From: Hemiscyllium ocellatum
Taxonomy: Eukaryota
Direction of reading: 5' to 3'
DNA: 64,000 nucleotides
Assembly (NCBI RefSeq): GCF_020745735.1
Contig: NC_083409.1
Coordinates: 29,532,048-29,596,047 of the forward strand
The position numbers and the translations under genes are program-made. Positions 1-64,000 of this stretch are shown one piece after another; position 1 is the first letter of the stretch; every line of letters starts with the position of its first letter. The notes under the pieces were generated by a model that worked only from the letters and a program-made list of their open reading frames with translations, ran no database searches and was not told where the DNA came from.

Positions 1-309
1 GAGATTTAACGTATTGTGAAATCGTGCAAAGGGAAAGATTAGATGGAAGAAATAACCAATAGGGATCTGAGTGAATAAAATGCAAAAGGAAAGATTTGTG
101 CATGTTAAAGGAGTGGCAGTCTTACTCTGGCATTGTTGCATTCGGAATACAATACACTGAAGCATAAACATTTTGAACAAATGTTGAATTGAACCATCTG
201 TTAATTTTACAAATTATTTGCTAGCATCTGAACATAATGCAAAGACTTATTTCGAATGTGGGCCAATTTGATGATGTTGATAATGTCTAAATTTTATAAT
301 TTATTATCA

Positions 310-7597: not shown

Positions 7598-7905
7598 GAT
7601 TAGATTAGATTCTCTACAGTATGGAAACACGTTCTTCGACTCAACAAGTCCATACTGACCCTCCGAAGGCTAACCCATCCAGATCAATTCTCCTACCGTA
7701 TATTTACCCCTGACTGAAGTACCTAACACTCTAGGCAATTTAGCATGGTCAATTCACCTGACCTGTACATCTTTGGACTGTGGGAGGAAACCCATGTAGA
7801 CATGGGGAGAATGTGCAGACTCCACACAGACAGTTGTCCAGCGCTGGAATCGATCCTGGGTGCCTGGCGCTGTGAAACTGCAGTGCTAACCACTGAGCCA
7901 CCCAT
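7598..7905 (-). mobile_element. HE1-type V-SINE
   Basis: (gatta)n tail, reverse V-domain ggagaatgtgcagactccacacagacag, head gtgctaaccactgagccacc. Confidence 0.9.
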
Positions 7906-13785: not shown

Positions 13786-14429
13786 TGAGTAGCATCAGTG
13801 GAGAGAAATGGAATGCATGGATAAGATTCATGAGAAGAATATAGAGTATATTAGTTTACTGTATTGGAACAACAGTTCTGCGTTAACATCAGAAAAGAAA
13901 ACTAAATGAAATAGTGTCCCATAGCTTGAGAGGCTGTTTCAGGAATGATGACTATTATGTAGTTTCACACTAATTTCTTTATATAGATTGATTCTGTTCT
14001 GAAGGATCATTGGCCAAAACTTTTCATTGTGGGATTACTGTAAAGGATTCCATTTTGTAGTTGTAATTTATTGAAACAGTGTCAGTGTCCAGATATCAGC
14101 GACTGATGCAATCTTCAGCATCTCTGCAAATTCTTCCTATTATCTTCTCTGCTTTGTAGAGAACAACCTTGGCCCCATTTAATCTCTTAATGTAACTGAA
14201 GTTCCACCCCTTGGCCTAATTCCTTGAATATCCTTTGTGTGTTTCAGAAGATCTTTAGACATCACACTACAAGAAAGATGTAGAATTCAGCATAGTATTT
14301 TAGTTGAAGTCCAGCCAGCAATCTATAAATTTGCTGTGTAAATGATTATTTATGTTCACATTTACATAATGCTTGGTATCTCTACTTACTTGGTTCTGTA
14401 TTGTGGATTCTTGGCAAGACACAAATACA

Positions 14430-14627
14430 GGAGAAAGTGAGGACTGCAGGTGCTGGAGATCAGAGCTGAAAATGTGTTGCTGGAAAAGTGCACCAGGTCA
14501 GGCAGCATCCAAGGAGCAGGAGAATCAATGTTTCGGGCCTGAAGAAGGGCTCATGTCCGAAATGTTGATTCTCCTGCTCCTTGGATGCTGCCTGACCTGC
14601 TGCGCTTTTCCAGCAACATACTTTCAG
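14430..14627. mobile_element. Fold-back Penelope pLTR mini-element with TSD
   Basis: Inverted arms ~14463-14538 and ~14555-14627; TSD caagacacaaa(t/c)aca at 14415-14429 and 14628-14642. Confidence 0.88.
14539..14572 (+). ncRNA. Minimal hammerhead ribozyme motif (decayed)
   Basis: CUGAAGA-A-GGGC UCAU GUCC-GAAA-UGUU; CpG-decayed core, native 5' stem I strand lost. Confidence 0.6.
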
Positions 14628-14879
14628 CAAGACACAAACACATCCTATGTCTTGATTTTCCAAGCTCATCGTTATTAGCAGGGCTCTTCTTCTCATTTTG
14701 CCAGTCTCTGAAATGTTAAGGATCCTGGTATATTTGGTTCCCAATCTTAGTTATTCTGCACCCATAAGTCTGTAATGGAATAAGATCAAATGTGTGAACT
14801 TCTGTTATTAATTCATCAATTTTCTTCCAAATGCTTTGCATATTGTACCTTAATTTGACATGGTTTCTATTTTTCTGTG

Positions 14880-25519: not shown

Positions 25520-25554
25520 CACTAGCTTTCGGAGCGACGCTCCTTCATCAGGTG
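25520..25554 (-). ncRNA. Minimal type-I hammerhead ribozyme (intact, family 2)
   Basis: CAC-CUGAUGA-A-GGAGC GUC GCUCC-GAAA-GCUA|GUG: intact core, 5-bp stem II, CAC/GUG stem I, palindromic AGCU in place of helix III. Confidence 0.85.
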
Positions 25555-25945
25555 ATAGTGGAGGGCTCAATCGTAACACAGAATTTATAGCAAAAATTTG
25601 CAGTGTGATGTAACTGGAATTAGACATTGAAAAATTGATTGTCTGTTAAGCCTTTTATCTGTTAGAATACAGTGATCATTTCACTTCTTTCATGTCTAAA
25701 TCACAAAACCCTTCTTTTTAAAGTTGCATTCTTGGGTTAGCTGCTAACAATGGTGATAGCTAGACAATATGTTGAAGGTGTTGGCCCCCTGTGTTCTCTG
25801 TCTATGACCTGATGTTTAGATTGATTCTAATCTAATAAGTGAGATAAGTGTTTGACATAAATTCATGCAGTTTTTAAGCTCAGAGTTCTACATGAATGTA
25901 TGCAGTTTTTGAGCAAAGTGCAATGTAACTCTGCAATAAAAACAT

Positions 25946-28079: not shown

Positions 28080-28402
28080 TCTTAGAATCTCTACAGTATG
28101 GAAACGGACCACTTGGCTAATTGAGTCCACGCCCACCCTTTGAAGAGCATCCCACCCCATCCCTACAACCCTGCATTTCCCATGGCTAATCCACATAAAC
28201 TACACATCCCTGGACAATATGGGCAATTTAGCATGGCCAATTCACCTAACCTGCAGTGGGAGGAAACCCGAGCACCCAGAGGTAACCCAACCATACATGG
28301 TGAGAATATGTAAACTCCATACACACAGTCACCTGAGAGTGGAATGGAACCCGGGTCTCCTGGTGCTGTGAGGTAGCAGTGCTAACCACTGAGCAACCAT
28401 GC
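28080..28402 (-). mobile_element. HE1-type V-SINE
   Basis: Same architecture as 7598-7905. Confidence 0.9.
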
Positions 28403-28450
28403 CACTCAGATTGTGAAGGAGCAGGTCAGGGAGCATCCAAGGAACAGGAA

Positions 28451-28486
28451 ATTCGACGTTTCGGTCATAAGCCCTTCATCAGGAAT
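28451..28486 (-). ncRNA. Minimal type-I hammerhead ribozyme (one stem II mismatch)
   Basis: Reverse complement reads AUUC-CUGAUGA-A-GGGC UUAU GACC-GAAA-CGUC|GAAU. Confidence 0.8.
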
Positions 28487-28490
28487 CCTG

Positions 28491-28526
28491 ATTCCTGATG
28501 AAGGGCTTATGCCCGAAACGTCGAAT
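28491..28526 (+). ncRNA. Minimal type-I hammerhead ribozyme (intact, family 1)
   Basis: AUUC-CUGAUGA-A-GGGC UUAU GCCC-GAAA-CGUC|GAAU; predicted cleavage after 28522. Confidence 0.87.
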
Positions 28527-29699
28527 TTCCTGTTCCTTGGATGCTGCCTGACCTGCCACGCTTTTCCAGCAACACATTTTCAGCTCTGATACTCCAGCAT
28601 CTGCAGACCTCACTTTCTCCACTCAGATTGTGAAGGTAATAACAGAGTTTTAGAAATTTGTTATCAGAAAGATTTCTTCTCAAAGAACAGTGAAGAGGTA
28701 ATAGACATCTGACTAATTGATCAGTTGGATTAATGTTTGTGCTTTCATTTGCCTGGCTATGGATCAAGAACCAGGAGGCTAACAAATTCATCAAGTTGAT
28801 TGGACAATTTGTTTCTGTTATCTTGGTTCCAATGATTCTCAAGCATCATTACTGCCAGGGTTGCCCAAAAGTTAATGGTCTAGTCAAGGTACATAAAGCT
28901 TGTGATTTACCTATCCGATGGGATAACATTAATAGCAAACACTGTCCAAGTTCATCTACTTAACAAGACGTCTGTTTATTATAAATAAGTGCATTCTAAT
29001 CACAAGTAAGCAGCTATGTGTTATCAATATATGGCACTGCTAGTTAAAATTCTAAACTGATCTACAGACAAACTAAAGAAATTGCTTTCATAAATGAAAG
29101 GAGAAAATAAACTGTGTAATACAGTCCAATATTACCAGTCCACAGGGTTTGCCGAGGTGGTCTGTCCTAGCTTGTCAGAAATCTTTATTTTTCAATCTCC
29201 TTTATCCTCGCTTTTTCACTTGTTTGCTGGAGACGCAGCTGATGGAGAAAATAACAAGCTTTCTTCCAGCATCAAGTATTTTCACTGAAGAGAGATAGTG
29301 ACATCCATATAACATGCCCTTCCAGCAGTCTGAAAGTTTTGTGCTACATTGTTTGCTCACCCAGGACTATATCAGAAATTTATCAAAAGGCTGATGATGT
29401 TTGGCGCCCGTGACTGGTCACAATTGCACAAACCAATTAGCCACTTGCTGCCAACCAAATCTTATGCTGCTAACACGCAACCCTGGGGCTGTGCTGTCAG
29501 AACATTTTTCCCTGTTACTTTGTTAAACAGCAGTGCGATAACCAAATTTGATTAACTTGGTTTTTTAAAAGTCCAGCAAATCCTTATACAGTCCTTTTTT
29601 TGTTTGAACAAATCTTTTTTCCAATGTCGTCCACAATGAATAATACCGGTCTCCACCTTAACAGATGAAAAGCTGTTTCAAAAAAGTGTGTTTCATTAT

Positions 29700-37220: not shown

Positions 37221-37337
37221 AGATTTATGTGCATGTATGTACATGTACTCACCTGTACATTCCAAATCAACTTTGATTGGAACTGAAGAGCAAGTGTTGA
37301 TTGTTAACTATGTTTGATGAAGTGACTTATTCATCTC

Positions 37338-37466
37338 ACATTCCTGATGAAGGGCTTTTGCCTGAAACATCGATTCTTCTGCTTGTCGGATGGTGCCTGA
37401 CCTGCTGTGCTTTTCCAGCACCACACTCTCGACTCTAATCTTCAGCATCTGCAGTCCTCGCTGTCT
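37338..37466 (+). mobile_element. Solo Penelope pLTR starting at the hammerhead
   Basis: attcctgatgaagggcttttgcctgaaacatcgatt...ccagcaccacact...cagcatctgcagtcctc; imperfect flanking repeat tgactta(t/c)t(c/t)atct. Confidence 0.85.
37340..37375 (+). ncRNA. Minimal hammerhead motif (CpG-decayed)
   Basis: CUGAUGA-A-GGGC UUUU GCCU-GAAA-CAUC; palindrome ACGU mutated to ACAU. Confidence 0.7.
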
Positions 37467-39099
37467 GACTTACTTATCTGTCAACTCAATATTGAACATT
37501 GTCTTTTTACTGCATTAGAAGAACTTGGGTTAGATGCATTATTTCGGTCTTGAAGTAGTTGATTGCTTATACAATTTGAATTGTCTCTTTTTTATGTTGT
37601 GAGGAGTACAGCTTCCCTGTGGATTGATTTGAGGATATCCTGTTTGTTGGTCGTGCCTTTGATTAAATTTTTCATTATGATGCACGTGTGTATACGCACA
37701 CAACTGGATATACAGTGTTTTGATGTCAGCCATTTGAACTCTGTTAACAGGTCAGACATCCAGATAAAACATACTAGCAAAGATGTTAGTGGGATCACTA
37801 TGTATGTGGTAGTGTTCAGGACTGAAGCAATTATTTAATTTAAGTGTCTACTATCAGATTAATTCTTGAACATAAATAATTCTGATGGAGAGGAAAGGAG
37901 GATTAAGGAGTTCTTTGAGATGAATGTTTTGCTGATAAGTTCAAGACTAATTTTTTTTCAGTATCATGATTTCTTGATTGTCCTTTATTTAAAATATTTA
38001 CGTTGCACTTTTGCAATGTTCATGCACTTTGAAGCACAACTTGTATCAGATGGAATGGACAAAGGATGAATCACTCGGTAATCCTTTTTAGTCCATAGTG
38101 AATATTAAGTCACAGCTGTAGACCAATCTCATAATTGGCAATAGTTGGTTATGCAAATATGCAATGGCATACATATCTTTTATACAGATTAATGGCTTTG
38201 TAAGACTGAGAAAAACCCACAAAATTGTTATTCCAAGTGAAATTTTTGGTGGATTTCCAATGTTTGATTTTTTTGCTTGTCTGAGTGAAGGTTAACTGAA
38301 CATTATAGTAACATTTTGGATAGCTTTTGGTATCTCATCTGAATGAACATTCTGCACATATACATTTAGACTAAGCATTGGCAGTTTGTTTATAAATCCA
38401 GGTAAAGGGCAAAAGAGGGAACAGTATGTACAGCTGAGTTCCACTTGTGCACATTCGTGCATATTTTTCAGTAGAGATCATTGGAATATTTCTCTTTGCC
38501 AAGGCACGTTTAGGTCAGTTATGGTTACCCATTGTTTGACTGATTGAGTTTATTAAGTGAGGACAAATAATATTTGAACAAGAGCAACGATGTCCATATG
38601 TTTAGCCTCTTTTCAAAGGTGTAAGATATTGCAAAACACTTCACAATTACATAATTCACCAAAATTAGATACAATGCCAAAGTAGATGAAGCTTGGTACA
38701 TAACATATTTGTTAAAGATAGATTTTTGACACTTGTATGAGTGGTGGAGATTTAGGAAGAGAGTTAAGAAACTAAGTGTTAAGTGGCTGAAATTCCGGTA
38801 CTATCATAAAGGAAATAGGTGATGTGTAAAAGACCCGAGTTGGAGGACTGCAGATTTTTTTTGGAACATTGTCAGTCAAGGTACAGATGAAAGGGAAAAG
38901 TAGAGCCAAGAATAATAAAATAAATGGGCAATGAAATGATTTTAAATTGAAGGAATGGGAGCCAGTTTGTAAGTGAGCACAGAGATGATGGATGAATGGG
39001 ACTTAAAACAGACTGAGTTCAAATTCGATATTTAGTATCATGTTTGGTCCTTGAGCAGCAAGGAGAAGCTGCTTGCAAGTCAAGTCACAATGAGCAGTA

Positions 39100-39429: not shown

Positions 39430-42400
39430 CTCCTTTTTTTTTGAGGTATTTTAGGTGTTGGAGGTGATTTCCTCAAAATCCAGGAGCAGCAATTACTGAT
39501 TTATATGTCGTTGCACTGTTTTGGGGGGAAAACAAGGTGAAAACAATGGAACTTTTAAAAGGAGGAAGACAGACAAAAGGCAATGACCACATGGTCAGTG
39601 CGGGAGAGAGAGAAAGTAACCTACACTGCTAACTGACACAGCAATGAATCTGCACAGTTACACCTTTACTGTTTGAGTTCAAGTATCTCTGGGAGTCAGA
39701 GTGTGTCTAGGAAAACTGAACAAACCCCAAAATTCACAGCTGACCTTGGAAGAACCTGTGTGGGAGAGCTCACAGCATAGGAACAGTTAATTGCATAGAT
39801 TTTAAGTCTACTGTTGTGAATAGATGGCTTCTTTCTTGATTTATATTTTTTATTGAGATCTGTCTCTTGATTAAATTTTTAAAATATAAACGGGAGTTAG
39901 CCTGGAGCACTTTTTCAGAGCAAAACAATAATGCTATTTTCTAGGTCTACAGATTGCGAAGGAGCAAAGATGGCCTTTAGTGATATGCTGTTCCTGTTGG
40001 ATGTAAGAGTTTAGGGAGAATTTCCATGTTACTAATGATTATGTCTGCAGGAAGTGTCTTTGGTTGTGAATCCTATCATATCGCATGGATCAGTTGGAGC
40101 GGCAGTTAGAGGCAGTAAGGAATTTATAAGTGCTGGGGGTCCGATGGACGACAGTTGTAGGAAGGGAGAAAAACCATATATACTGTTCAGTTACTGGGTT
40201 AACTCGAGGCAAGGTAGAAAGATATACAGGTAGGAGGCTTCTGTGGCTATCCCGATTTCAAACCAGTATGCTGTTATGGAAAATATAGTGAGTAATGGAC
40301 TGTCAGGGGAATGTAGCATGAACAGTCAAGTTTCTGGTATCAAGACTGGCTCTAATGTAATGAGAGGTACTTTTGGGTTCCAAGCGATCAGTTATGATAG
40401 GGAATTCTAGTCAGAAGCATAGACAGATGCTTCCGCAACCAGCAACGAAAAATCAGAATGGTGTGTTGCCTCTCTGGTGCCAGGATCAAGGATATCTCAG
40501 ACAGGTGCAGTATGTTCTCAGAGGGGAGAAGGAGCAGCAGGAGGTCATTGTACACATTGGAACCAACGTTAAAGGAGGGGAAAAGGATGTGATTGTGAAA
40601 GGGAAATATAAAAAGTTGGGCAGGAATTTAAAGAGGACCTTGAGGTTAATAATATTTGGATTATTCCCAGTGCTACAAGCAAGTGAGGTGAGGAATAGAT
40701 GTATAGAGCAGATGAATGCGTGGCTGAGGAGCTGGTGCAGGAGAGAAGGGTTCACATTTTTGGATCATTGGTATCTCTTCTGGTGACCTGTACAAAAATG
40801 ATGGATTGCACCTGAATTGGAAGGTGACTAAAATACTGGCAAGGTGATTTGCTAGAGCACTTTGGGAAAATCTAAATTAGTAAGGTAGGGGGATGGGACT
40901 CAGGGAGATAGTGAGGAATGAGATCAATCTGAGACTGGTACAATTGGGAAAAGGAGCAAGTCAAACAGTCAGGGCAGCGAGGAACTAAGCAGAGAACAAG
41001 GCAATACTGATAAATTAAACTGCATTTACTTCAATGCAAGAGACCTAACATGGAAAGCAGATGAACTCAGGGCATAGCTCGGAACTTGGGACTGCAATAT
41101 CATAGCAATTACAGAAACGTGGCTCAGGGATGTTGTACAAAGTATCAAAAGGGGGGGGGGGGTGCCAAGAGAGGAGGGGGAGTGGCATTTTTGATAAGGG
41201 ATAGCATTTCTGCTGACTGAGGGAGGATATTCCTGGGAATACATCCAGTGAAGTTATTTGGATGGAACTGAGAAATAAGAAAGGGATGATCACCTTATTG
41301 GGATTGTATTTATAGACCCACCCAATGGTCAGTGGGAAATTGAGAAACAAATTTGTGAGGAGATTTCAGTTTATCTGGAGGAATAGTAGGGTCGTTATGG
41401 TTGGGGATTTTAACTTTGCAAACATATACTGGGACTGCCATAGTGTTAAGGGTTTAGATGGAGAGGAATTTGTTCAGTGTGTAACAAGAAAATTTTCTGA
41501 TTCAGTATGTGGATGTACCTACTAGAGAAGGTGCAAAACCTTACCTGCACTTGGGAAATATGGTAGAGCAGGTGACTGAAATGTCAGTGGTGGAGCCATT
41601 TGGGGCCAGCGACCATATTCTATCAGTTTTAGAATAGTGGTGGTAAAGGACAGACCAAATCTAAAAGTTGAAGTTGTAAATTGGAGGAAAGCTCATTTTG
41701 ATGGTATTAGGCAAGAACTTTCAAAAGCTGATTGGGAGCAGATGTTTGCAGGTAAAGGGACAGTTGGAAAGTGGGAAGCCTTCATAAGTGAGATCACGAG
41801 AATCCAGAGACAATATATTCCTATTAGGGTGAAAGGGAAGACTGATAGCTGTAGGGAATGCTGGATGACTCAAGAAATTTAGGTTTTGTTTTAGAAAAAG
41901 AAGGTATATATTAGGTATAGACTGGAGAGATCGAGTGAATCCTCAGAAGAGTGTGGATGTGTGGATCCTCGGGAGATGGGGGAGATACTAAAAGAGTATT
42001 TTGCATCAGTTTTTACAGTGGAGAAGAACGGACAGAATGTGATGAAATAGTTGGTAACATTTTGAAGAATGGCCATGTTACAGAGGAGGAAGTGCTGAAT
42101 ATCTTGAATTGCGTAAAAGTGGATAAATCCCTAGGACCTGATCAGGTGTAACCTAGAATTCTGGGGAGCTGGTGATTGCTGGGCTCTTTGCTAAGATATT
42201 TGTATCATCAGTAGTCACACTTGGGGTGTCGGAAGACTGGAGGTTGGCTAATGTGGTACCACTATTTAAGAAAGGTGGTCAGGTCAAGCCTGGGAACAAT
42301 CTACCTTTGAGCCTGATATCAGTGGTGGGCAGGTTGATGGAGGGAGTCCTGACGAATAGGATTTACATATATTTGGAAAGGCAAGGATTGATTAAGGAAA

Positions 42401-43635
42401 GTCAGCATGGCTTTGTGCATGGGAAATCATATCTCACTCACTTGATTGAGTCTTTTGAAGAAGTAACAAAGAGGATTGATGAGCGCAGAGTGGTAGGCGT
42501 GATCTATATGGACTTCACTAAGGCTTTTGATAAGGTTCCTCATGGGGGATTGGTGAGCAAAGTTCAATCTCATGGAATACAGGGAGAACCAGCCATTTGG
42601 ATACAGAACTGGCTCAAAGGTAGAGGATAGAGGGTTGCTTTTCAGACTGGAGTCAGGTGACCAGGCTTGGTGCAGAGTGTTGCTTTTCGTCAGTGAAATA
42701 ATTGATTTGGATTTGAACATATGAGGTAAAGTTAGCAAGTTTGCAGATGACACAAAATTGGAGGTGTAGTGGACAGCAAAGAAGGTTACCTCAGATTACA
42801 AAGAGATTTTGATCAGATGGGGCAATGGTCTGAGGACTGACAGATGGAGTTTAATTTAGGTAAATGTGAGGTGCTGCATTATGGGAGAGCAAACCTTACC
42901 AGAACTTATGCACTTAATGGTCAGGTCCTGAGGAGTGTTGCTGATCGAAGAGACCTTGGATTGCAGGTTTATAGTTCCTTGAAAGTAGAATCGTAGGTAG
43001 ATAGGATAGTGAAGGAGGCATTTGGTATGTTTTCCTTTATTGGCCAGAGCATTGAATACAGAAGTTGGGAAGTCATTTTGCAGCTGTATAGGACATTGGT
43101 TTGGCCACTATTGGAACATTGCATGCAGTTCTGGTCTCCTTCCTATCGGAAGGATGGTGTGAAACTTGAAAGGGTTCAGAAAAGATTTACAAGGATGTTG
43201 CCAGGGTTGGAGGATTTGAGCTATAGGGAGAGGCTGAATAGGCTGGAGCTATTTTCTCTGGAGCACCTTATAGAGATTTATAAAATCATGAGGGACACGA
43301 ATAGGATAAATAGTCCAAGTCTTTCCCTTGGGTGGGAGAGTCCTGAAGGGCATAGGTTTAGGGGGAGCGAGGAAAGATATAAAAGGGACCAATGGGACAA
43401 CTTTTTGATGCAGAGGGTACAACATGTGGGGAATGAGATGTCGAGGAAGTGGTGGGGGCTGGTACAATTACAGCATTTAAAAAACATCTGGATGGCTATG
43501 TGAATAGGAAGTGTTGAGGGGGATATAGGCCAAGTGCTGGCAAATGGGATTAGATTATGTTAGGATAACTGGTCGGCATGGATGAATTGGACCAAAGGGT
43601 CTTTTTCCATGCTGTATATCTCTGTGACTCTATAA
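39430..43635 (+). mobile_element. Near full-length decayed CR1 LINE (5' UTR, ORF1 zinc finger + SGNH esterase, ORF2 APE + RT, 3' tail)
   Basis: CRKC near 40045; VIVHIGTN...MNAWLRSWCRREGFTFLDHW; LNCIYFNAR, ITETWL, VMVGDFN; WRLANVVPLFKKG; QHGF; IYMDFTKAFDKVPH; KFADDTK; tail ctctgtgactctat; stops, frameshifts and internal deletions. Confidence 0.95.
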
Positions 43636-44689
43636 CTAAGTACATTCAAGTTCTTGATTATCTTAATGTTGAGTTAATTGTCTGAGTGTTAATTAATGAC
43701 AAGGCGATGCCATTGTGGGTTCTTTCAACATACTTGTCTTTTTGACTAAACTGAAAAATTACAATGTTGGAGACATTTCAATGTTACGCAAAGGAAGGAA
43801 TACGCCAGGTCAGGATGTGATATGATATTTGTGGATCAGTTTCAGAGTTATTTTGGTCTCTAAACTCTCTTCAAATTGCACTAGCTTTTTTAGAAGCACG
43901 AGAGGAGGTCAGTCGTCTCTCCTATTATAAGAAAATTGGGGGGAAGTTCATAATTCTAACATCGAAGCTTTGAGAAAGTAGCAACAGTTTGTCAAAAGAT
44001 TGCGGGATTAAATGAATAGCTATGCAATGACTGTAAAAATAAGGTCTATTTCTGGTTATGTATTGATAGAAAAAAACAAGTTGGTGGTTTGTCTCATGCC
44101 TGTTGCATCATCAGAATTATACTTTCCCAGAGTTGAAATCTGGGAACTTGGTATATCCTTTAGATCTCTTTTTTTTAGCTCTATGACTCAGAATTTAAAA
44201 CATAAGTTAGCATGATTTTATCTCCATGCTGCCAGAAGTCTGTACATTGCCCAATGTAAGCGATACAACACGATAGCCCAAAATATCCACCTGCTCTTGT
44301 CTGAAATTAATTTTCACTTGCTTTATATTTAAATAATTATTTTGTCACAAAATCTTACTTTCATTGGCCTGCTCAGCTCATTCTCAAGAACATGTACAAT
44401 ATGTTATATGACAATGCTGCAGGTTTGCATGTAATTAATATGTGCAGAGAAAGAAATACAAGTACAGAAATGAATACATCTGTTTAATTCAAGTAGTTGC
44501 TTCAAATTGTGAAAATCTTTACTAGTGAGGAAGCAAATCCATAACTGATGTGCTCATAACTGGAATGTGAAAGATTCAATTTGGCTGACTTTATCTCTTT
44601 GGGATGCTCAGATTTTTCTAAGTTACTTCCTATTGTCTGGTCTTTAGACAGTTGGAGCTGTTTAACTTGAATACAAGTCAAAAGTAAAC

Positions 44690-44875
44690 TTCTGCAGATA
44701 CTGCCTAATCTACAGAGTATCGCCAGCATCTTCTGTTCTTATTTCAGATTTCTAGCATCTGCAGAAAGTGATGAGAGAACTGATGAAAGGTCATCAACTT
44801 GAAATGTCAACTGTGTATTTTTATGCACAGATGTTGACTGACGAGTGTTTTCAGTTTTTTTTTTCATTTTCAGAG
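44690..44875 (+). mobile_element. Two tandem old Penelope pLTR relics; decayed hammerhead at ~44777-44812
   Basis: cagatactgcc...tttcagatttctagcatctgcag then ctgatgaaaggtcatcaacttgaaatgtcaact...cacagatgttgactga. Confidence 0.68.
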
Positions 44876-53984: not shown

Positions 53985-54360
53985 AAAAAAAATCCAAAGA
54001 ACTGCAGATGCTGGAAATAGGAAACAAAAGCAGAAATTGCTTGAAAATCTCAGCATGGAAAGAAAGGAGGTAAAAACAATGACTACAGATGCTGGAAACC
54101 AGATTCTGGATCAGTGGTGCTGGAAGAGCATAGCAGTTCAGGCAGCATCCAACAAGCAGCGAAATCAATGTTTCGGGCAAAAGCCCTTAATCAAGAATAA
54201 AGGCAGTGAGCCTGAAGCGTGGAGAGATAAGCTAGGGGAGGGTCGGGGTGGGGAGAGAGTAGAGTTGGATGCTGCCTGAACTGCTGTGCTCTTCCAGCAC
54301 CACTGATCCAGAAGCATGGAAAGAAAGCAGAGTCAACATTTCAGATCCAGTTACCCTTCT
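53985..54360 (-). mobile_element. Older Penelope pLTR (53985-54066 and 54313-54360)
   Basis: aactgcagatgctggaaat...aaaagcagaaattgcttgaaaatctcagca / aaagcagagtcaacatttcag...acccttct. Confidence 0.72.
54067..54312 (-). mobile_element. Fold-back Penelope pLTR mini-element with perfect 15-bp TSD; decayed hammerhead at 54163-54198
   Basis: TSD agcatggaaagaaag at 54052-54066 and 54313-54327; arm ~54264-54312 is the inverse of ~54101-54153. Confidence 0.88.
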
Positions 54361-63849: not shown

Positions 63850-64000
63850 ATTAGAGTGGTGCTGGAAAAGCACAGCAGGTCAGGCAGCTTCCGAGGAGCA
63901 GGAAAATCGACGTTTCGGTCAAAAACCCTTCATCAGGAATAGAGCTTTTCTCAAGTGGGAGGATTCGACGGAGAAATTGTTAAGGGTGAGGACCAGTTCA
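63850..64000 (-). mobile_element. Penelope pLTR fused directly to an RT-domain segment (runs off window)
   Basis: pLTR 63850-63945; 63953-64000 (-) translates ELVLTLNNFSVESSH, matching the RT motif at ~33765-33810. Confidence 0.85.
63905..63940 (-). ncRNA. Minimal type-I hammerhead motif (core intact)
   Basis: AUUC-CUGAUGA-A-GGGUUUUUGACC-GAAA-CGUC|GAUU. Confidence 0.75.

What the first reader, a model, noticed from the sequence alone, without database searches (positions are those of the whole stretch)
28402..28636. 199-bp fold-back mobile unit with back-to-back hammerhead ribozymes on opposite strands
Seen: a perfect 18-bp TSD brackets two copies of AUUC-CUGAUGA-A-stemII-GAAA-CGUC|GAAU pointing away from each other, only 4 nt (cctg) apart, inside a ~67-bp near-perfect hairpin with CpGs intact (so probably young). 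Established: Penelope pLTRs carry minimal type-I hammerheads, and inverted pLTR arrangements occur. Inference: RNA from either strand contains one ribozyme plus its antisense, giving an ambisense, rod-like, protein-free unit reminiscent of viroids/retrozymes. It may be a one-off integration product or a MITE-like family mobilised by Penelope RT/GIY-YIG.
Basis: partly seen in the sequence, partly recalled or inferred. Interest (0 to 1): 0.85.

Follow-up and report, generated by a model that had tools for sequence, protein, structure and literature searches.

The report
Head-to-head Penelope mini-insertion with hammerheads
This 199-bp hairpin-shaped insert is a miniature, probably dead-on-arrival Penelope-type retroelement insertion in which two hammerhead-bearing end fragments were joined head to head during integration, a known by-product of this transposon class and not a new viroid-like mobile unit.

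Summary
A perfect 18-bp target-site duplication brackets 199 bp. Inside are two 67-nt inverted arms (65/67 complementary), and each arm starts with a Penelope-type minimal hammerhead motif. The two motifs lie 4 nt apart and point outwards.

The long arm (28491-28618) is a complete ~128-nt non-coding unit: a hammerhead plus 96 nt ending at a fixed 3' end. The short arm is an inverted copy of unit positions 1-67.

The same 64-kb window holds two more TSD-flanked fold-backs of this family, at 14430-14627 and 54067-54313, and one simple copy. Each fold-back has a different junction and different arm lengths.

Head-to-head inverted pLTR copies with palindromic junctions are a published hallmark of Penelope-like elements, and a purified Penelope-like element (PLE) enzyme extends both target strands in vitro.

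A read-through transcript of either strand folds into a ~-130 kcal/mol hairpin that buries the ribozyme. The dimer partner that these minimal hammerheads need is also missing.

First-stage notes on other pieces of this genome report the same class repeatedly; they are unchecked. This is a new member of a known kind, of low to moderate interest.

The parts
28402..28419 (.). Left copy of the target-site duplication (18 bp; 17 bp if the last C of the unit is counted as element)
   Evidence: 18/18 identical to 28619-28636
28420..28420 (.). Single base (a) between the TSD and the short arm. It is either filler or unit position 68, because its complement T matches the family consensus ...CCTGCT
28421..28487 (-). 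Short inverted arm: reverse complement of unit positions 1-67 plus one extra inner base. Its outer end is 3'-truncated inside the unit
   Evidence: Inverted repeat I1, 67 nt, 97%; nhmmer model positions 1-67
28451..28486 (-). Left minimal hammerhead motif: helix I AUUC/GAAU, core CUGAUGA, bulged A, helix II GGGC/GACC with one G.A mismatch, GAAA, ACGU, C17 at 28455
28487..28490 (.). Head-to-head junction cctg between the two unit 5' ends. Read per arm, each arm has one extra G before ATTCC, and the centre is ct
28491..28618 (+). Long arm: a complete ~128-nt non-coding Penelope-type unit, from ATTCC (5' strand of hammerhead helix I) to the family's fixed 3' end ...CCTCACTTTCTC(C)
   Evidence: blastn and nhmmer against other copies; alignment A1; no open frame through it
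28491..28526 (+). Right minimal hammerhead motif, intact: AUUC 28491-94, CUGAUGA 28495-501, A 28502, helix II plus loop 28503-14, GAAA 28515-18, CG 28519-20, U 28521, C17 28522 (predicted cut after it), GAAU 28523-26
28537..28556 (+). Most conserved block of the family (TGGATGCTGCCTGACCTGC); function unknown, a candidate protein-binding or promoter element
   Evidence: Invariant columns of alignment A1; 10 matches in the window against 0.01 expected
28619..28636 (.). Right copy of the target-site duplication
14430..14627 (-). Second, older fold-back insertion of the same family (198 bp). The long arm is on the - strand and ends in ...CCTCACTTTCTCC. The junction lies inside hammerhead helix II. 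The TSD is 14415-14429 / 14628-14642 (14/15)
   Evidence: (arms 78 nt, 90%)
54067..54313 (-). Third fold-back insertion, of a related subfamily (247 bp). The long arm runs ~65 nt upstream of the hammerhead. The 50-nt short arm covers unit positions ~46-94, with 110 nt between the arms. The TSD is 54053-54066 / 54314-54327 (14/14)
37340..37466 (+). Simple (non-inverted) full-length copy of the unit. It starts at the same ATTCC. The TSD is 37324-37336 / 37467-37479 (11/13), with 3 nt of 5' filler

Best explanation
The 199 bp between the TSDs is the product of one Penelope-like-element (PLE) integration event using a short, non-coding, hammerhead-bearing template RNA of ~128 nt. That RNA is either the pLTR end of a PLE or a non-autonomous derivative of one. 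Shown: one arm is the complete unit with the family's fixed 3' end abutting the TSD. The other arm is an inverted copy of unit positions 1-67 abutting the other TSD copy. The two meet head to head at the unit's 5' end with 4 nt of filler. Inferred mechanism: the PLE endonuclease cut both target strands about 18 bp apart. Reverse transcription primed on one strand started at the canonical internal initiation site, 96 nt 3' of the hammerhead cut site, and ran to the RNA 5' end. The second arm was made in one of two ways. Either a second priming event on the other target strand ran to the same RNA 5' end, or the RT jumped or snapped back onto the nascent cDNA. The ends were then joined. The result is a palindromic, non-autonomous, probably inert insert. 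The hammerheads are passengers carried in the copied RNA. They were not used to define the insert's ends, and they cannot fold in a transcript that spans the palindrome. The architecture recurs because it is a frequent outcome of PLE integration, not because the fold-back itself replicates.
For: Anatomy: TSD, arms and junction. [quoted passage not shown] Unit boundaries are defined. The 3' end ...CCTCACTTTCTCC abuts the TSD in both the 28k and 14k copies, and the 37k copy has the equivalent end. Four independent 5' ends fall on the same ATTCC: both 28k arms, 37k and 63k. Recurrence with variable junctions: of the four insertions in the window with recognisable TSDs, three are fold-backs, with junctions at unit position 1, inside helix II, and ~65 nt upstream of the hammerhead. 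Their short arms cover positions 1-67, 4-94 and 46-94. They account for 3 of the only 4 inverted repeats of 30 nt or more within 400 nt in the 64 kb. Literature: PLE insertions 'often' carry an adjacent inverted 5'-truncated copy (PMC8557442). Head-to-head inverted pLTRs with palindromes at the junction, solo pLTRs and trans-mobilisation by pLTRs alone are described in PMC3846280. The purified Anolis PLE protein cleaves and extends both target strands. It starts RT internally ~85-92 nt 3' of the hammerhead cut site and does not need hammerhead cleavage for insertion (PMC11167929). Here the 3' end is 96 nt after the cut site, and none of the 6 arms begins at the cut site.
Against: No PLE RT/GIY-YIG ORF lies in the window; the only RT is LINE-type. 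The link to an autonomous PLE therefore rests on motif type, architecture and literature. In the in vitro PAc system both strands used the same RT start sites, yet all three short arms here begin at non-canonical internal positions, so the second-arm step is not simply the published reaction. The dual-priming and snap-back variants cannot be separated: the 28k copy fits both, and the asymmetric 14k junction fits dual priming or a later central deletion. No genome-wide census was possible. One unchecked first-stage note (s1-147447) reports a fold-back 'present twice with the same junction' elsewhere in this genome.
Confidence: 0.75

Rival explanations
1. The fold-back is itself a propagating non-autonomous family (a hairpin SINE or MITE-like element) that is transcribed as a whole and re-inserted by PLE RT/GIY-YIG, keeping its junction.
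For: The long arm keeps the complete 3' end where PLE RT would initiate, so a read-through transcript could in principle be re-mobilised. First-stage notes from other windows speak of 'families', and one of 'the same junction twice' (unchecked).
Against: No second copy of this junction exists in 64 kb. The three fold-backs present have three different junctions, arm lengths and loop sizes. The short arm's outer end lies at an arbitrary internal position.
Confidence: 0.1
2. The unit is a SINE-like element mobilised by a LINE, and the inversion is classical twin priming.
For: TSDs of 13-18 bp and 5' inversions are typical of L1-type target-primed reverse transcription (TPRT; established knowledge). 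A decayed LINE lies in the window at about 40-44 kb.
Against: The 3' end has no poly(A) or microsatellite tail. In twin priming the inverted segment lies upstream of the direct segment in the RNA, whereas here the two arms cover the same unit positions. The hammerhead has the specific traits of PLE min-HHRs. The distance from the cut site to the 3' end is comparable to that in the PLE in vitro system.
Confidence: 0.07
3. The inversion arose after a simple insertion, by a DNA-level event such as fold-back repair or replication template switching.
For: Palindromes can arise by such routes (established knowledge).
Against: The TSD copies abut the outer ends of both arms, within 1 nt on the short-arm side. 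The same holds for the other two fold-backs. Three independent post-insertional inversions, each ending exactly at a TSD, are unlikely.
Confidence: 0.04
4. It is a functional ambisense ribozyme RNA (viroid- or retrozyme-like), or a hairpin RNA / miRNA gene.
For: Each strand carries one sense hammerhead. The hairpin is extremely stable, z about -18. Sub-threshold Rfam hits to miRNA hairpin families were found, for example MIR6136 at 54.8 bits.
Against: The hammerhead fold has essentially zero probability in the fold-back RNA. The antisense is transcribed first on both strands, so the duplex zips up from the loop. Minimal PLE hammerheads need a second sense copy to work, and the nearest on the + strand is 8.8 kb away. 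There are no tandem repeats. All Rfam hits are far below gathering scores, 54.8 against 99. The left copy has a helix II mismatch.
Confidence: 0.04

Closest known systems
Head-to-head inverted pLTR arrangement of Penelope-like element insertions (Evgen'ev & Arkhipova 2005; Arkhipova et al. 2013, PMC3846280; Craig et al. 2021, PMC8557442)
   Same: A TSD-flanked insert in which an inverted, shorter copy of the terminal repeat abuts the 5' end of the direct copy. The junction is palindromic and the terminal repeat carries a hammerhead.
   Different: There is no ORF and no second direct pLTR. The whole insert is only two terminal fragments (128 + 67 nt). The short arm is also truncated at its outer (3') end.
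PLE minimal hammerhead ribozymes (Cervera & de la Pena 2014, PMC4209133; Lunse et al. 2017, cited in PMC6765202)
   Same: CUGAUGA / GAAA core, an extra nucleotide between 9 and 10.1, the G10.1-C11.1 pair, helix III reduced to A-U with palindromic CG (ACGU), and type-I topology.
   Different: There is no tandem sense partner for dimer formation. The neighbouring copy is antisense on the same strand.
Anolis Poseidon PLE (PAc) in vitro integration (Frangieh et al. 2024, PMC11167929)
   Same: RT starts at an internal site roughly 90 nt 3' of the hammerhead cut site (96 nt here). Both target strands are cleaved and extended. Uncleaved RNA is the template: no arm here starts at the cut site.
   Different: In vitro, both strands used the same RT start sites. 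Here the second arm starts at variable internal positions.
L1 twin priming 5' inversions (Ostertag & Kazazian 2001; from my own knowledge)
   Same: An inverted 5' segment is created during TPRT, and the TSD is retained.
   Different: The arms here duplicate the same RNA segment and do not cover adjacent segments. There is no poly(A).
Animal non-LTR retrozymes (Cervera & de la Pena 2020; Li et al. 2026 preprint, 10.64898/2026.07.22.740005)
   Same: Short non-coding units carrying a type-I hammerhead, related to PLE pLTRs. Dispersed 'monomer' copies are known.
   Different: Retrozymes are defined by head-to-tail tandem arrays that yield circRNAs. This locus is head to head, not tandem.

Membership tests
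PLE minimal (dimer-type) type-I hammerhead | Conserved core boxes CUGANGA and GAAA in type-I order, with a cleavable H17 | tested here: met
   CUGAUGA 28495-28501, GAAA 28515-28518, C17 28522; mirrored on the - strand
PLE minimal (dimer-type) type-I hammerhead | [quoted passage not shown] | tested here: met
   A at 28502; GGGC/GCCC helix II. Criteria from PMC4209133. The left copy has one internal G.A mismatch
PLE minimal (dimer-type) type-I hammerhead | Helix III reduced to about 1 bp with palindromic 15.2/16.2 | tested here: met
   A-CG-U (ACGU) at 28518-28521
PLE minimal (dimer-type) type-I hammerhead | A second sense copy nearby (tandem) to form the active dimer | tested here: not met
   The only neighbour is antisense. 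The next + strand copy is at 37344
PLE minimal (dimer-type) type-I hammerhead | Self-cleavage | not testable with these tools
   Needs an in vitro transcription assay. Rfam hammerhead models gave no hit even at E<=10; I expect that, from my own knowledge, because a motif with helix III reduced to 1 bp should score poorly on them
Penelope-like element insertion | TSD, plus a fixed non-poly(A) 3' end set by internal RT initiation | tested here: met
   18-bp TSD. The same 3' end abuts the TSD in the 28k and 14k copies, 96 nt after the cut site
Penelope-like element insertion | Inverted 5'-truncated copy head to head with the direct copy | tested here: met
   described in PMC8557442 and PMC3846280
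Penelope-like element insertion | Terminal repeat belongs to an element encoding a telomerase-like RT plus GIY-YIG endonuclease | tested here: inconclusive
   No such ORF in the 64 kb; the only RT is LINE-type. The rest of the genome could not be searched
Non-LTR retrozyme | Head-to-tail tandem repeats, each with a hammerhead | tested here: not met
   No tandem copies at this locus
Propagating fold-back (MITE-like) family | Several copies with identical junction and arm lengths but different TSDs | tested here: not met
   In the window, 3 fold-backs have 3 different junctions. Genome-wide testing is not possible with these tools
Ambisense hammerhead RNA (Avsunviroidae-like) | The ribozyme can adopt its active fold in transcripts of each polarity; multimeric or circular RNA | tested here: not met
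   Pair probabilities are 5e-14 and 5e-33 in the fold-back RNA, with a hairpin of -125 kcal/mol. There is no tandem arrangement
L1-type twin priming | Inverted and direct segments are adjacent, non-overlapping parts of the RNA; poly(A) tail | tested here: not met
   Both arms cover unit positions 1-67, and there is no A-tail
Rfam miRNA precursor families | Score at or above the gathering threshold | tested here: not met
   Best hit is MIR6136 at 54.8 bits against 99

The most novel reading that the evidence does not exclude
Some of these hairpin minis may not be dead ends. They could form a self-perpetuating class of PLE-dependent hairpin retroelements. In that case a fold-back whose long arm keeps the RT initiation site is transcribed and re-inserted with its junction intact. 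Alternatively the two arms fire divergent transcripts from an internal promoter, each beginning with a free hammerhead. The perfect hairpins could also feed small-RNA silencing of PLEs.
Probability: 0.1. Interest if true: 0.6.

Novelty: new member of a known kind. Interest (0 to 1): 0.25.

Why it matters
The locus by itself is ordinary repeat biology. Its value is as a natural record of the still poorly understood PLE integration reaction. These very short, TSD-delimited insertions expose both ends and the inversion junction at single-nucleotide resolution.

In this one window they already suggest four things:
- The 3' end is fixed, about 96 nt after the hammerhead cut site, comparable to the in vitro RT start of an Anolis PLE.
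- The template RNA was not hammerhead-cleaved.
- The template has a defined 5' end at the base of helix I. Both arms of the young copy carry an extra G there, which may be a copied cap.
- Head-to-head products are common, at 3 of 4 TSD-delimited events.

A genome-wide census of such minis could test in vivo whether both target strands prime reverse transcription or whether the cDNA snaps back on itself.

Tried and rejected
- **Rfam, gathering thresholds, whole window:** no family matched.
- **Rfam, permissive E-values on 28300-28750:** only sub-threshold miRNA and snoRNA hairpin hits and no hammerhead model. I reject these as hairpin-driven. The MIR6136 hit shares a ~16-nt CGACGUUUCGG.CAUA string that I did not explain.
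- **Metagenome scan with the family's conserved 21-mer:** 7 loci, all matching only the 21-mer. Four have 62-65% GC, and none carries the unit. No related external copies were obtained, and the other collections hold no vertebrate DNA.
- **The search of earlier findings by sequence:** blank.
- **Pfam on all ORFs of 130 aa or more, and on the ORFs of 50 aa or more that I picked in 40054-44215:** only a decayed LINE (a GDSL-like match, a weak APE match and an RVT_1 match), with no GIY-YIG or PLE RT. PDB matches of the RT fragment are R2 and LINE-1.
- **ARAGORN on the upstream repeat:** no tRNA.
- **Coding potential of the unit:** no frame is open through it, and the ATG inside CUGAUGA closes after 17-18 codons in all copies.
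- **Structure of the isolated unit:** the 129-nt unit alone is no more structured than shuffles (z -0.71), so a rod-like fold is not a property of the unit.
- **Snap-back as the sole mechanism:** it fits the 28k copy. It does not fit the 14k copy without a later deletion, because that short arm contains ~17 nt missing from the long arm. For the 54k copy there is no microhomology at the would-be priming site.

Full report
**1. What is there**

The sequence and the repeat search confirm a perfect 18-bp direct repeat at 28402-28419 and 28619-28636, bracketing 199 bp. Inside, 28421-28487 and 28490-28556 are inverted repeats of 67 nt with 65/67 complementarity. The mismatches are at 28465/28512 and 28431/28546.

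The 28-nt string CTGATGA-A-GGGC-TTAT-GCCC-GAAA-CGTC occurs at 28495-28522 on the + strand (exact) and at 28455-28482 on the - strand (one mismatch). Shuffles give 0.00 expected matches. The helix-I strands AUUC/GAAU flank each copy. The two AUUC starts are separated by cctg at 28487-28490. C17 is 28522 on the + strand and 28455 on the - strand. The one omission is that the - strand copy has a C-to-A change that breaks a helix II pair.

**2. The hammerhead type**

The motif meets every sequence criterion that Cervera & de la Pena list for the minimal hammerheads of Penelope-like elements (PMC4209133):
- a G10.1-C11.1 pair;
- helix III reduced to A15.1-U16.1 with palindromic 15.2/16.2 (ACGU);
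- type-I topology.

Rfam's hammerhead models do not detect it, even at E<=10. I expect that, from my own knowledge, because a motif with helix III reduced to 1 bp should score poorly on those models.

These ribozymes are reported to be inactive as monomers and weakly active as dimers of two sense copies. In one PLE they are protein-assisted.

**3. The unit**

The right arm does not stop at 28556. It continues to 28618, and 28491-28618 is one complete copy of a ~128-nt repeat. Other copies in the window were found by blastn and nhmmer and aligned (A1).

- **3' end.** It is fixed. ...CCTCACTTTCTCC abuts the TSD in the 28k copy and, on the - strand, in the 14k copy. The 37k copy has the equivalent end. 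There is no A-tail or microsatellite.
- **5' end.** It is also fixed. Both arms at 28k, the simple copy at 37340 and the copy at 63940 (- strand) all begin at the same ATTCC. At 28k each arm carries one extra G there. That G is absent at this position in the 37k, 63k and 54k copies. It is compatible with copying of an RNA cap, which is an inference.
- **Coding potential.** No reading frame is open through the unit.
- **Conservation.** The best-conserved block is TGGATGCTGCCTGACCTGC, not the ribozyme.

**4. The fold-back is recurrent but not fixed**

A window-wide search for inverted repeats of 30 nt or more within 400 nt gave only four. Three of them are fold-backs of this family.

| Copy | Size | TSD | Short arm (unit positions) | Junction |
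|---|---|---|---|---|
| 28420-28618 | 199 bp | 18/18 | 1-67 | At position 1 |
| 14430-14627 | 198 bp | 14/15 | ~4-94 | Inside helix II; the long arm starts at about position 19-22 |
| 54067-54313 | 247 bp | 14/14 | ~46-94 | The long arm runs ~65 nt upstream of the hammerhead; 110 nt between the arms |

A fourth TSD-delimited insertion, 37340-37466, is simple.

In every fold-back one arm carries the canonical 3' end and the other ends at an arbitrary internal position next to the TSD. It fits a structure generated anew at each integration.

First-stage notes on many other pieces of this genome describe the same class. They are unchecked. One of them (s1-147447) claims a repeated junction, which I could not test.

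**5. How it was most likely made**

Head-to-head inverted copies are a textbook peculiarity of PLE insertions:
- Arkhipova et al. describe inverted pLTRs with palindromes at the junction, solo pLTRs and trans-mobilisation by pLTRs alone, and they propose self-priming (PMC3846280).
- Frangieh et al. show that a purified Anolis PLE protein cleaves and extends both target strands. It initiates RT internally at +111..118 of the ORF, with the hammerhead cut at +26, so ~85-92 nt after the cut. It does not need hammerhead cleavage, and no RNA-seq reads end at the cut site (PMC11167929).

Here the 3' end lies 96 nt after the cut site. None of the six arms begins at the cut site, and five of the six contain the whole ribozyme.

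I therefore read the locus in these steps:
1. A staggered double cut about 18 bp apart.
2. Canonical TPRT of a ~128-nt RNA to its 5' end.
3. A second, inverted arm made either by priming from the other target strand or by a jump or snap-back onto the nascent cDNA.
4. Joining with 4 nt of filler.

The two sub-variants cannot be separated here. The 28k copy fits both. The 14k short arm contains ~17 nt missing from its long arm, which favours two independent cDNAs unless a central deletion occurred later. The two arms at 28k differ at 2-3 positions. One short-arm variant (GACC in helix II) is shared with the 63k copy, a weak hint of two template RNAs. All three short arms start at non-canonical sites, and the in vitro data do not predict that.

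**6. Why it is not a viroid-like unit**

Folded as RNA, either strand of the 199 nt forms the 67-bp hairpin. MFE is -129.9 and -134.5 kcal/mol, with z -18.1 and -17.4. The hairpin alone is -124.8 kcal/mol, against -9.1 kcal/mol for the active-type fold of the isolated motif. The ensemble probability of the helix II closing pair is 5e-14 and of the innermost helix I pair 5e-33.

The ribozymes diverge from the centre. On either strand the antisense arm is therefore transcribed first, and the sense ribozyme emerges directly next to it, so co-transcriptional folding also favours the duplex (inference).

The dimer partner required by this ribozyme class is absent, and there are no tandem copies. 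The isolated unit is no more structured than shuffles (z -0.71). The Rfam miRNA hits are far below threshold.

**7. Limits**

No PLE ORF lies in the window. The RT at 42172-42630 sits downstream of a GDSL-like match and a weak APE match, and its closest solved relatives are R2 and LINE-1. No vertebrate genome could be searched: the metagenome scan returned only chance 21-mer matches. The PLE assignment and the 'no fixed family' conclusion therefore rest on this window plus the literature.

**8. Verdict**

It is a new member of a known kind. Interest is low to moderate, mainly as a natural read-out of PLE integration.

Noticed in passing
window 25520-25560 (- strand): A second, unrelated minimal hammerhead family: CUGAUGA-A-GGAGC-GUC-GCUCC-GAAA-GCU-A, with a 5-bp helix II and an AGCU helix-III palindrome. 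No inverted partner lies nearby.
   Followed up: partly
window 44690-44860 (+ strand): An old, decayed copy of a related family in a permuted, tandem-like order: unit 3' region (...ccagcatctgcag...) followed directly by a CUGAUGA hammerhead and the next unit's 5' half. This is the pLTR- or retrozyme-like head-to-tail arrangement. It lies just 3' of a decayed LINE.
   Followed up: partly
window 40373-43503 (+ strand): Decayed LINE: an ORF fragment with a GDSL-lipase-like match (40373-40786), a weak APE endonuclease match (41325-41525) and RVT_1 (42172-42630). The closest solved relatives are R2 and LINE-1 ORF2p. It is not a Penelope RT.
   Followed up: partly
window 28200-28405 (- strand); also near 7869 and 49263: A SINE-like repeat with a GGTTAGCACTGC... 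head (3 copies in the window, 0 expected). ARAGORN finds no tRNA in it. The 28k fold-back is inserted immediately beside its 5' end.
   Followed up: partly
window 14430-14627 and 28420-28618: The two fold-backs of the same subfamily have almost the same total length (198 and 199 bp) despite different junctions and arm lengths (107+91 against 128+67+4). This is probably coincidence (n=2; the third is 247 bp), but a genome-wide length distribution would show whether there is a ruler.
   Followed up: no
window 28452-28525: The sub-threshold Rfam hit to MIR6136 (54.8 bits, E 1.5e-9) is not purely structural. The model consensus shares CGAC-GUUUCGG-CAUA / UAUG-CCGAAAC-GUCG with the outer part of the hammerhead hairpin. 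Whether that miRNA family is itself a fold-back of a ribozyme-bearing repeat was not examined.
   Followed up: no
window 53999-54066 (- strand): An older fragment of a related unit (...ccagcatctgcag end) lies directly beside the 54k fold-back, whose TSD overlaps it. This is nested insertion of one mini into another, in line with PLEs' reported tendency to insert into or next to earlier copies.
   Followed up: no
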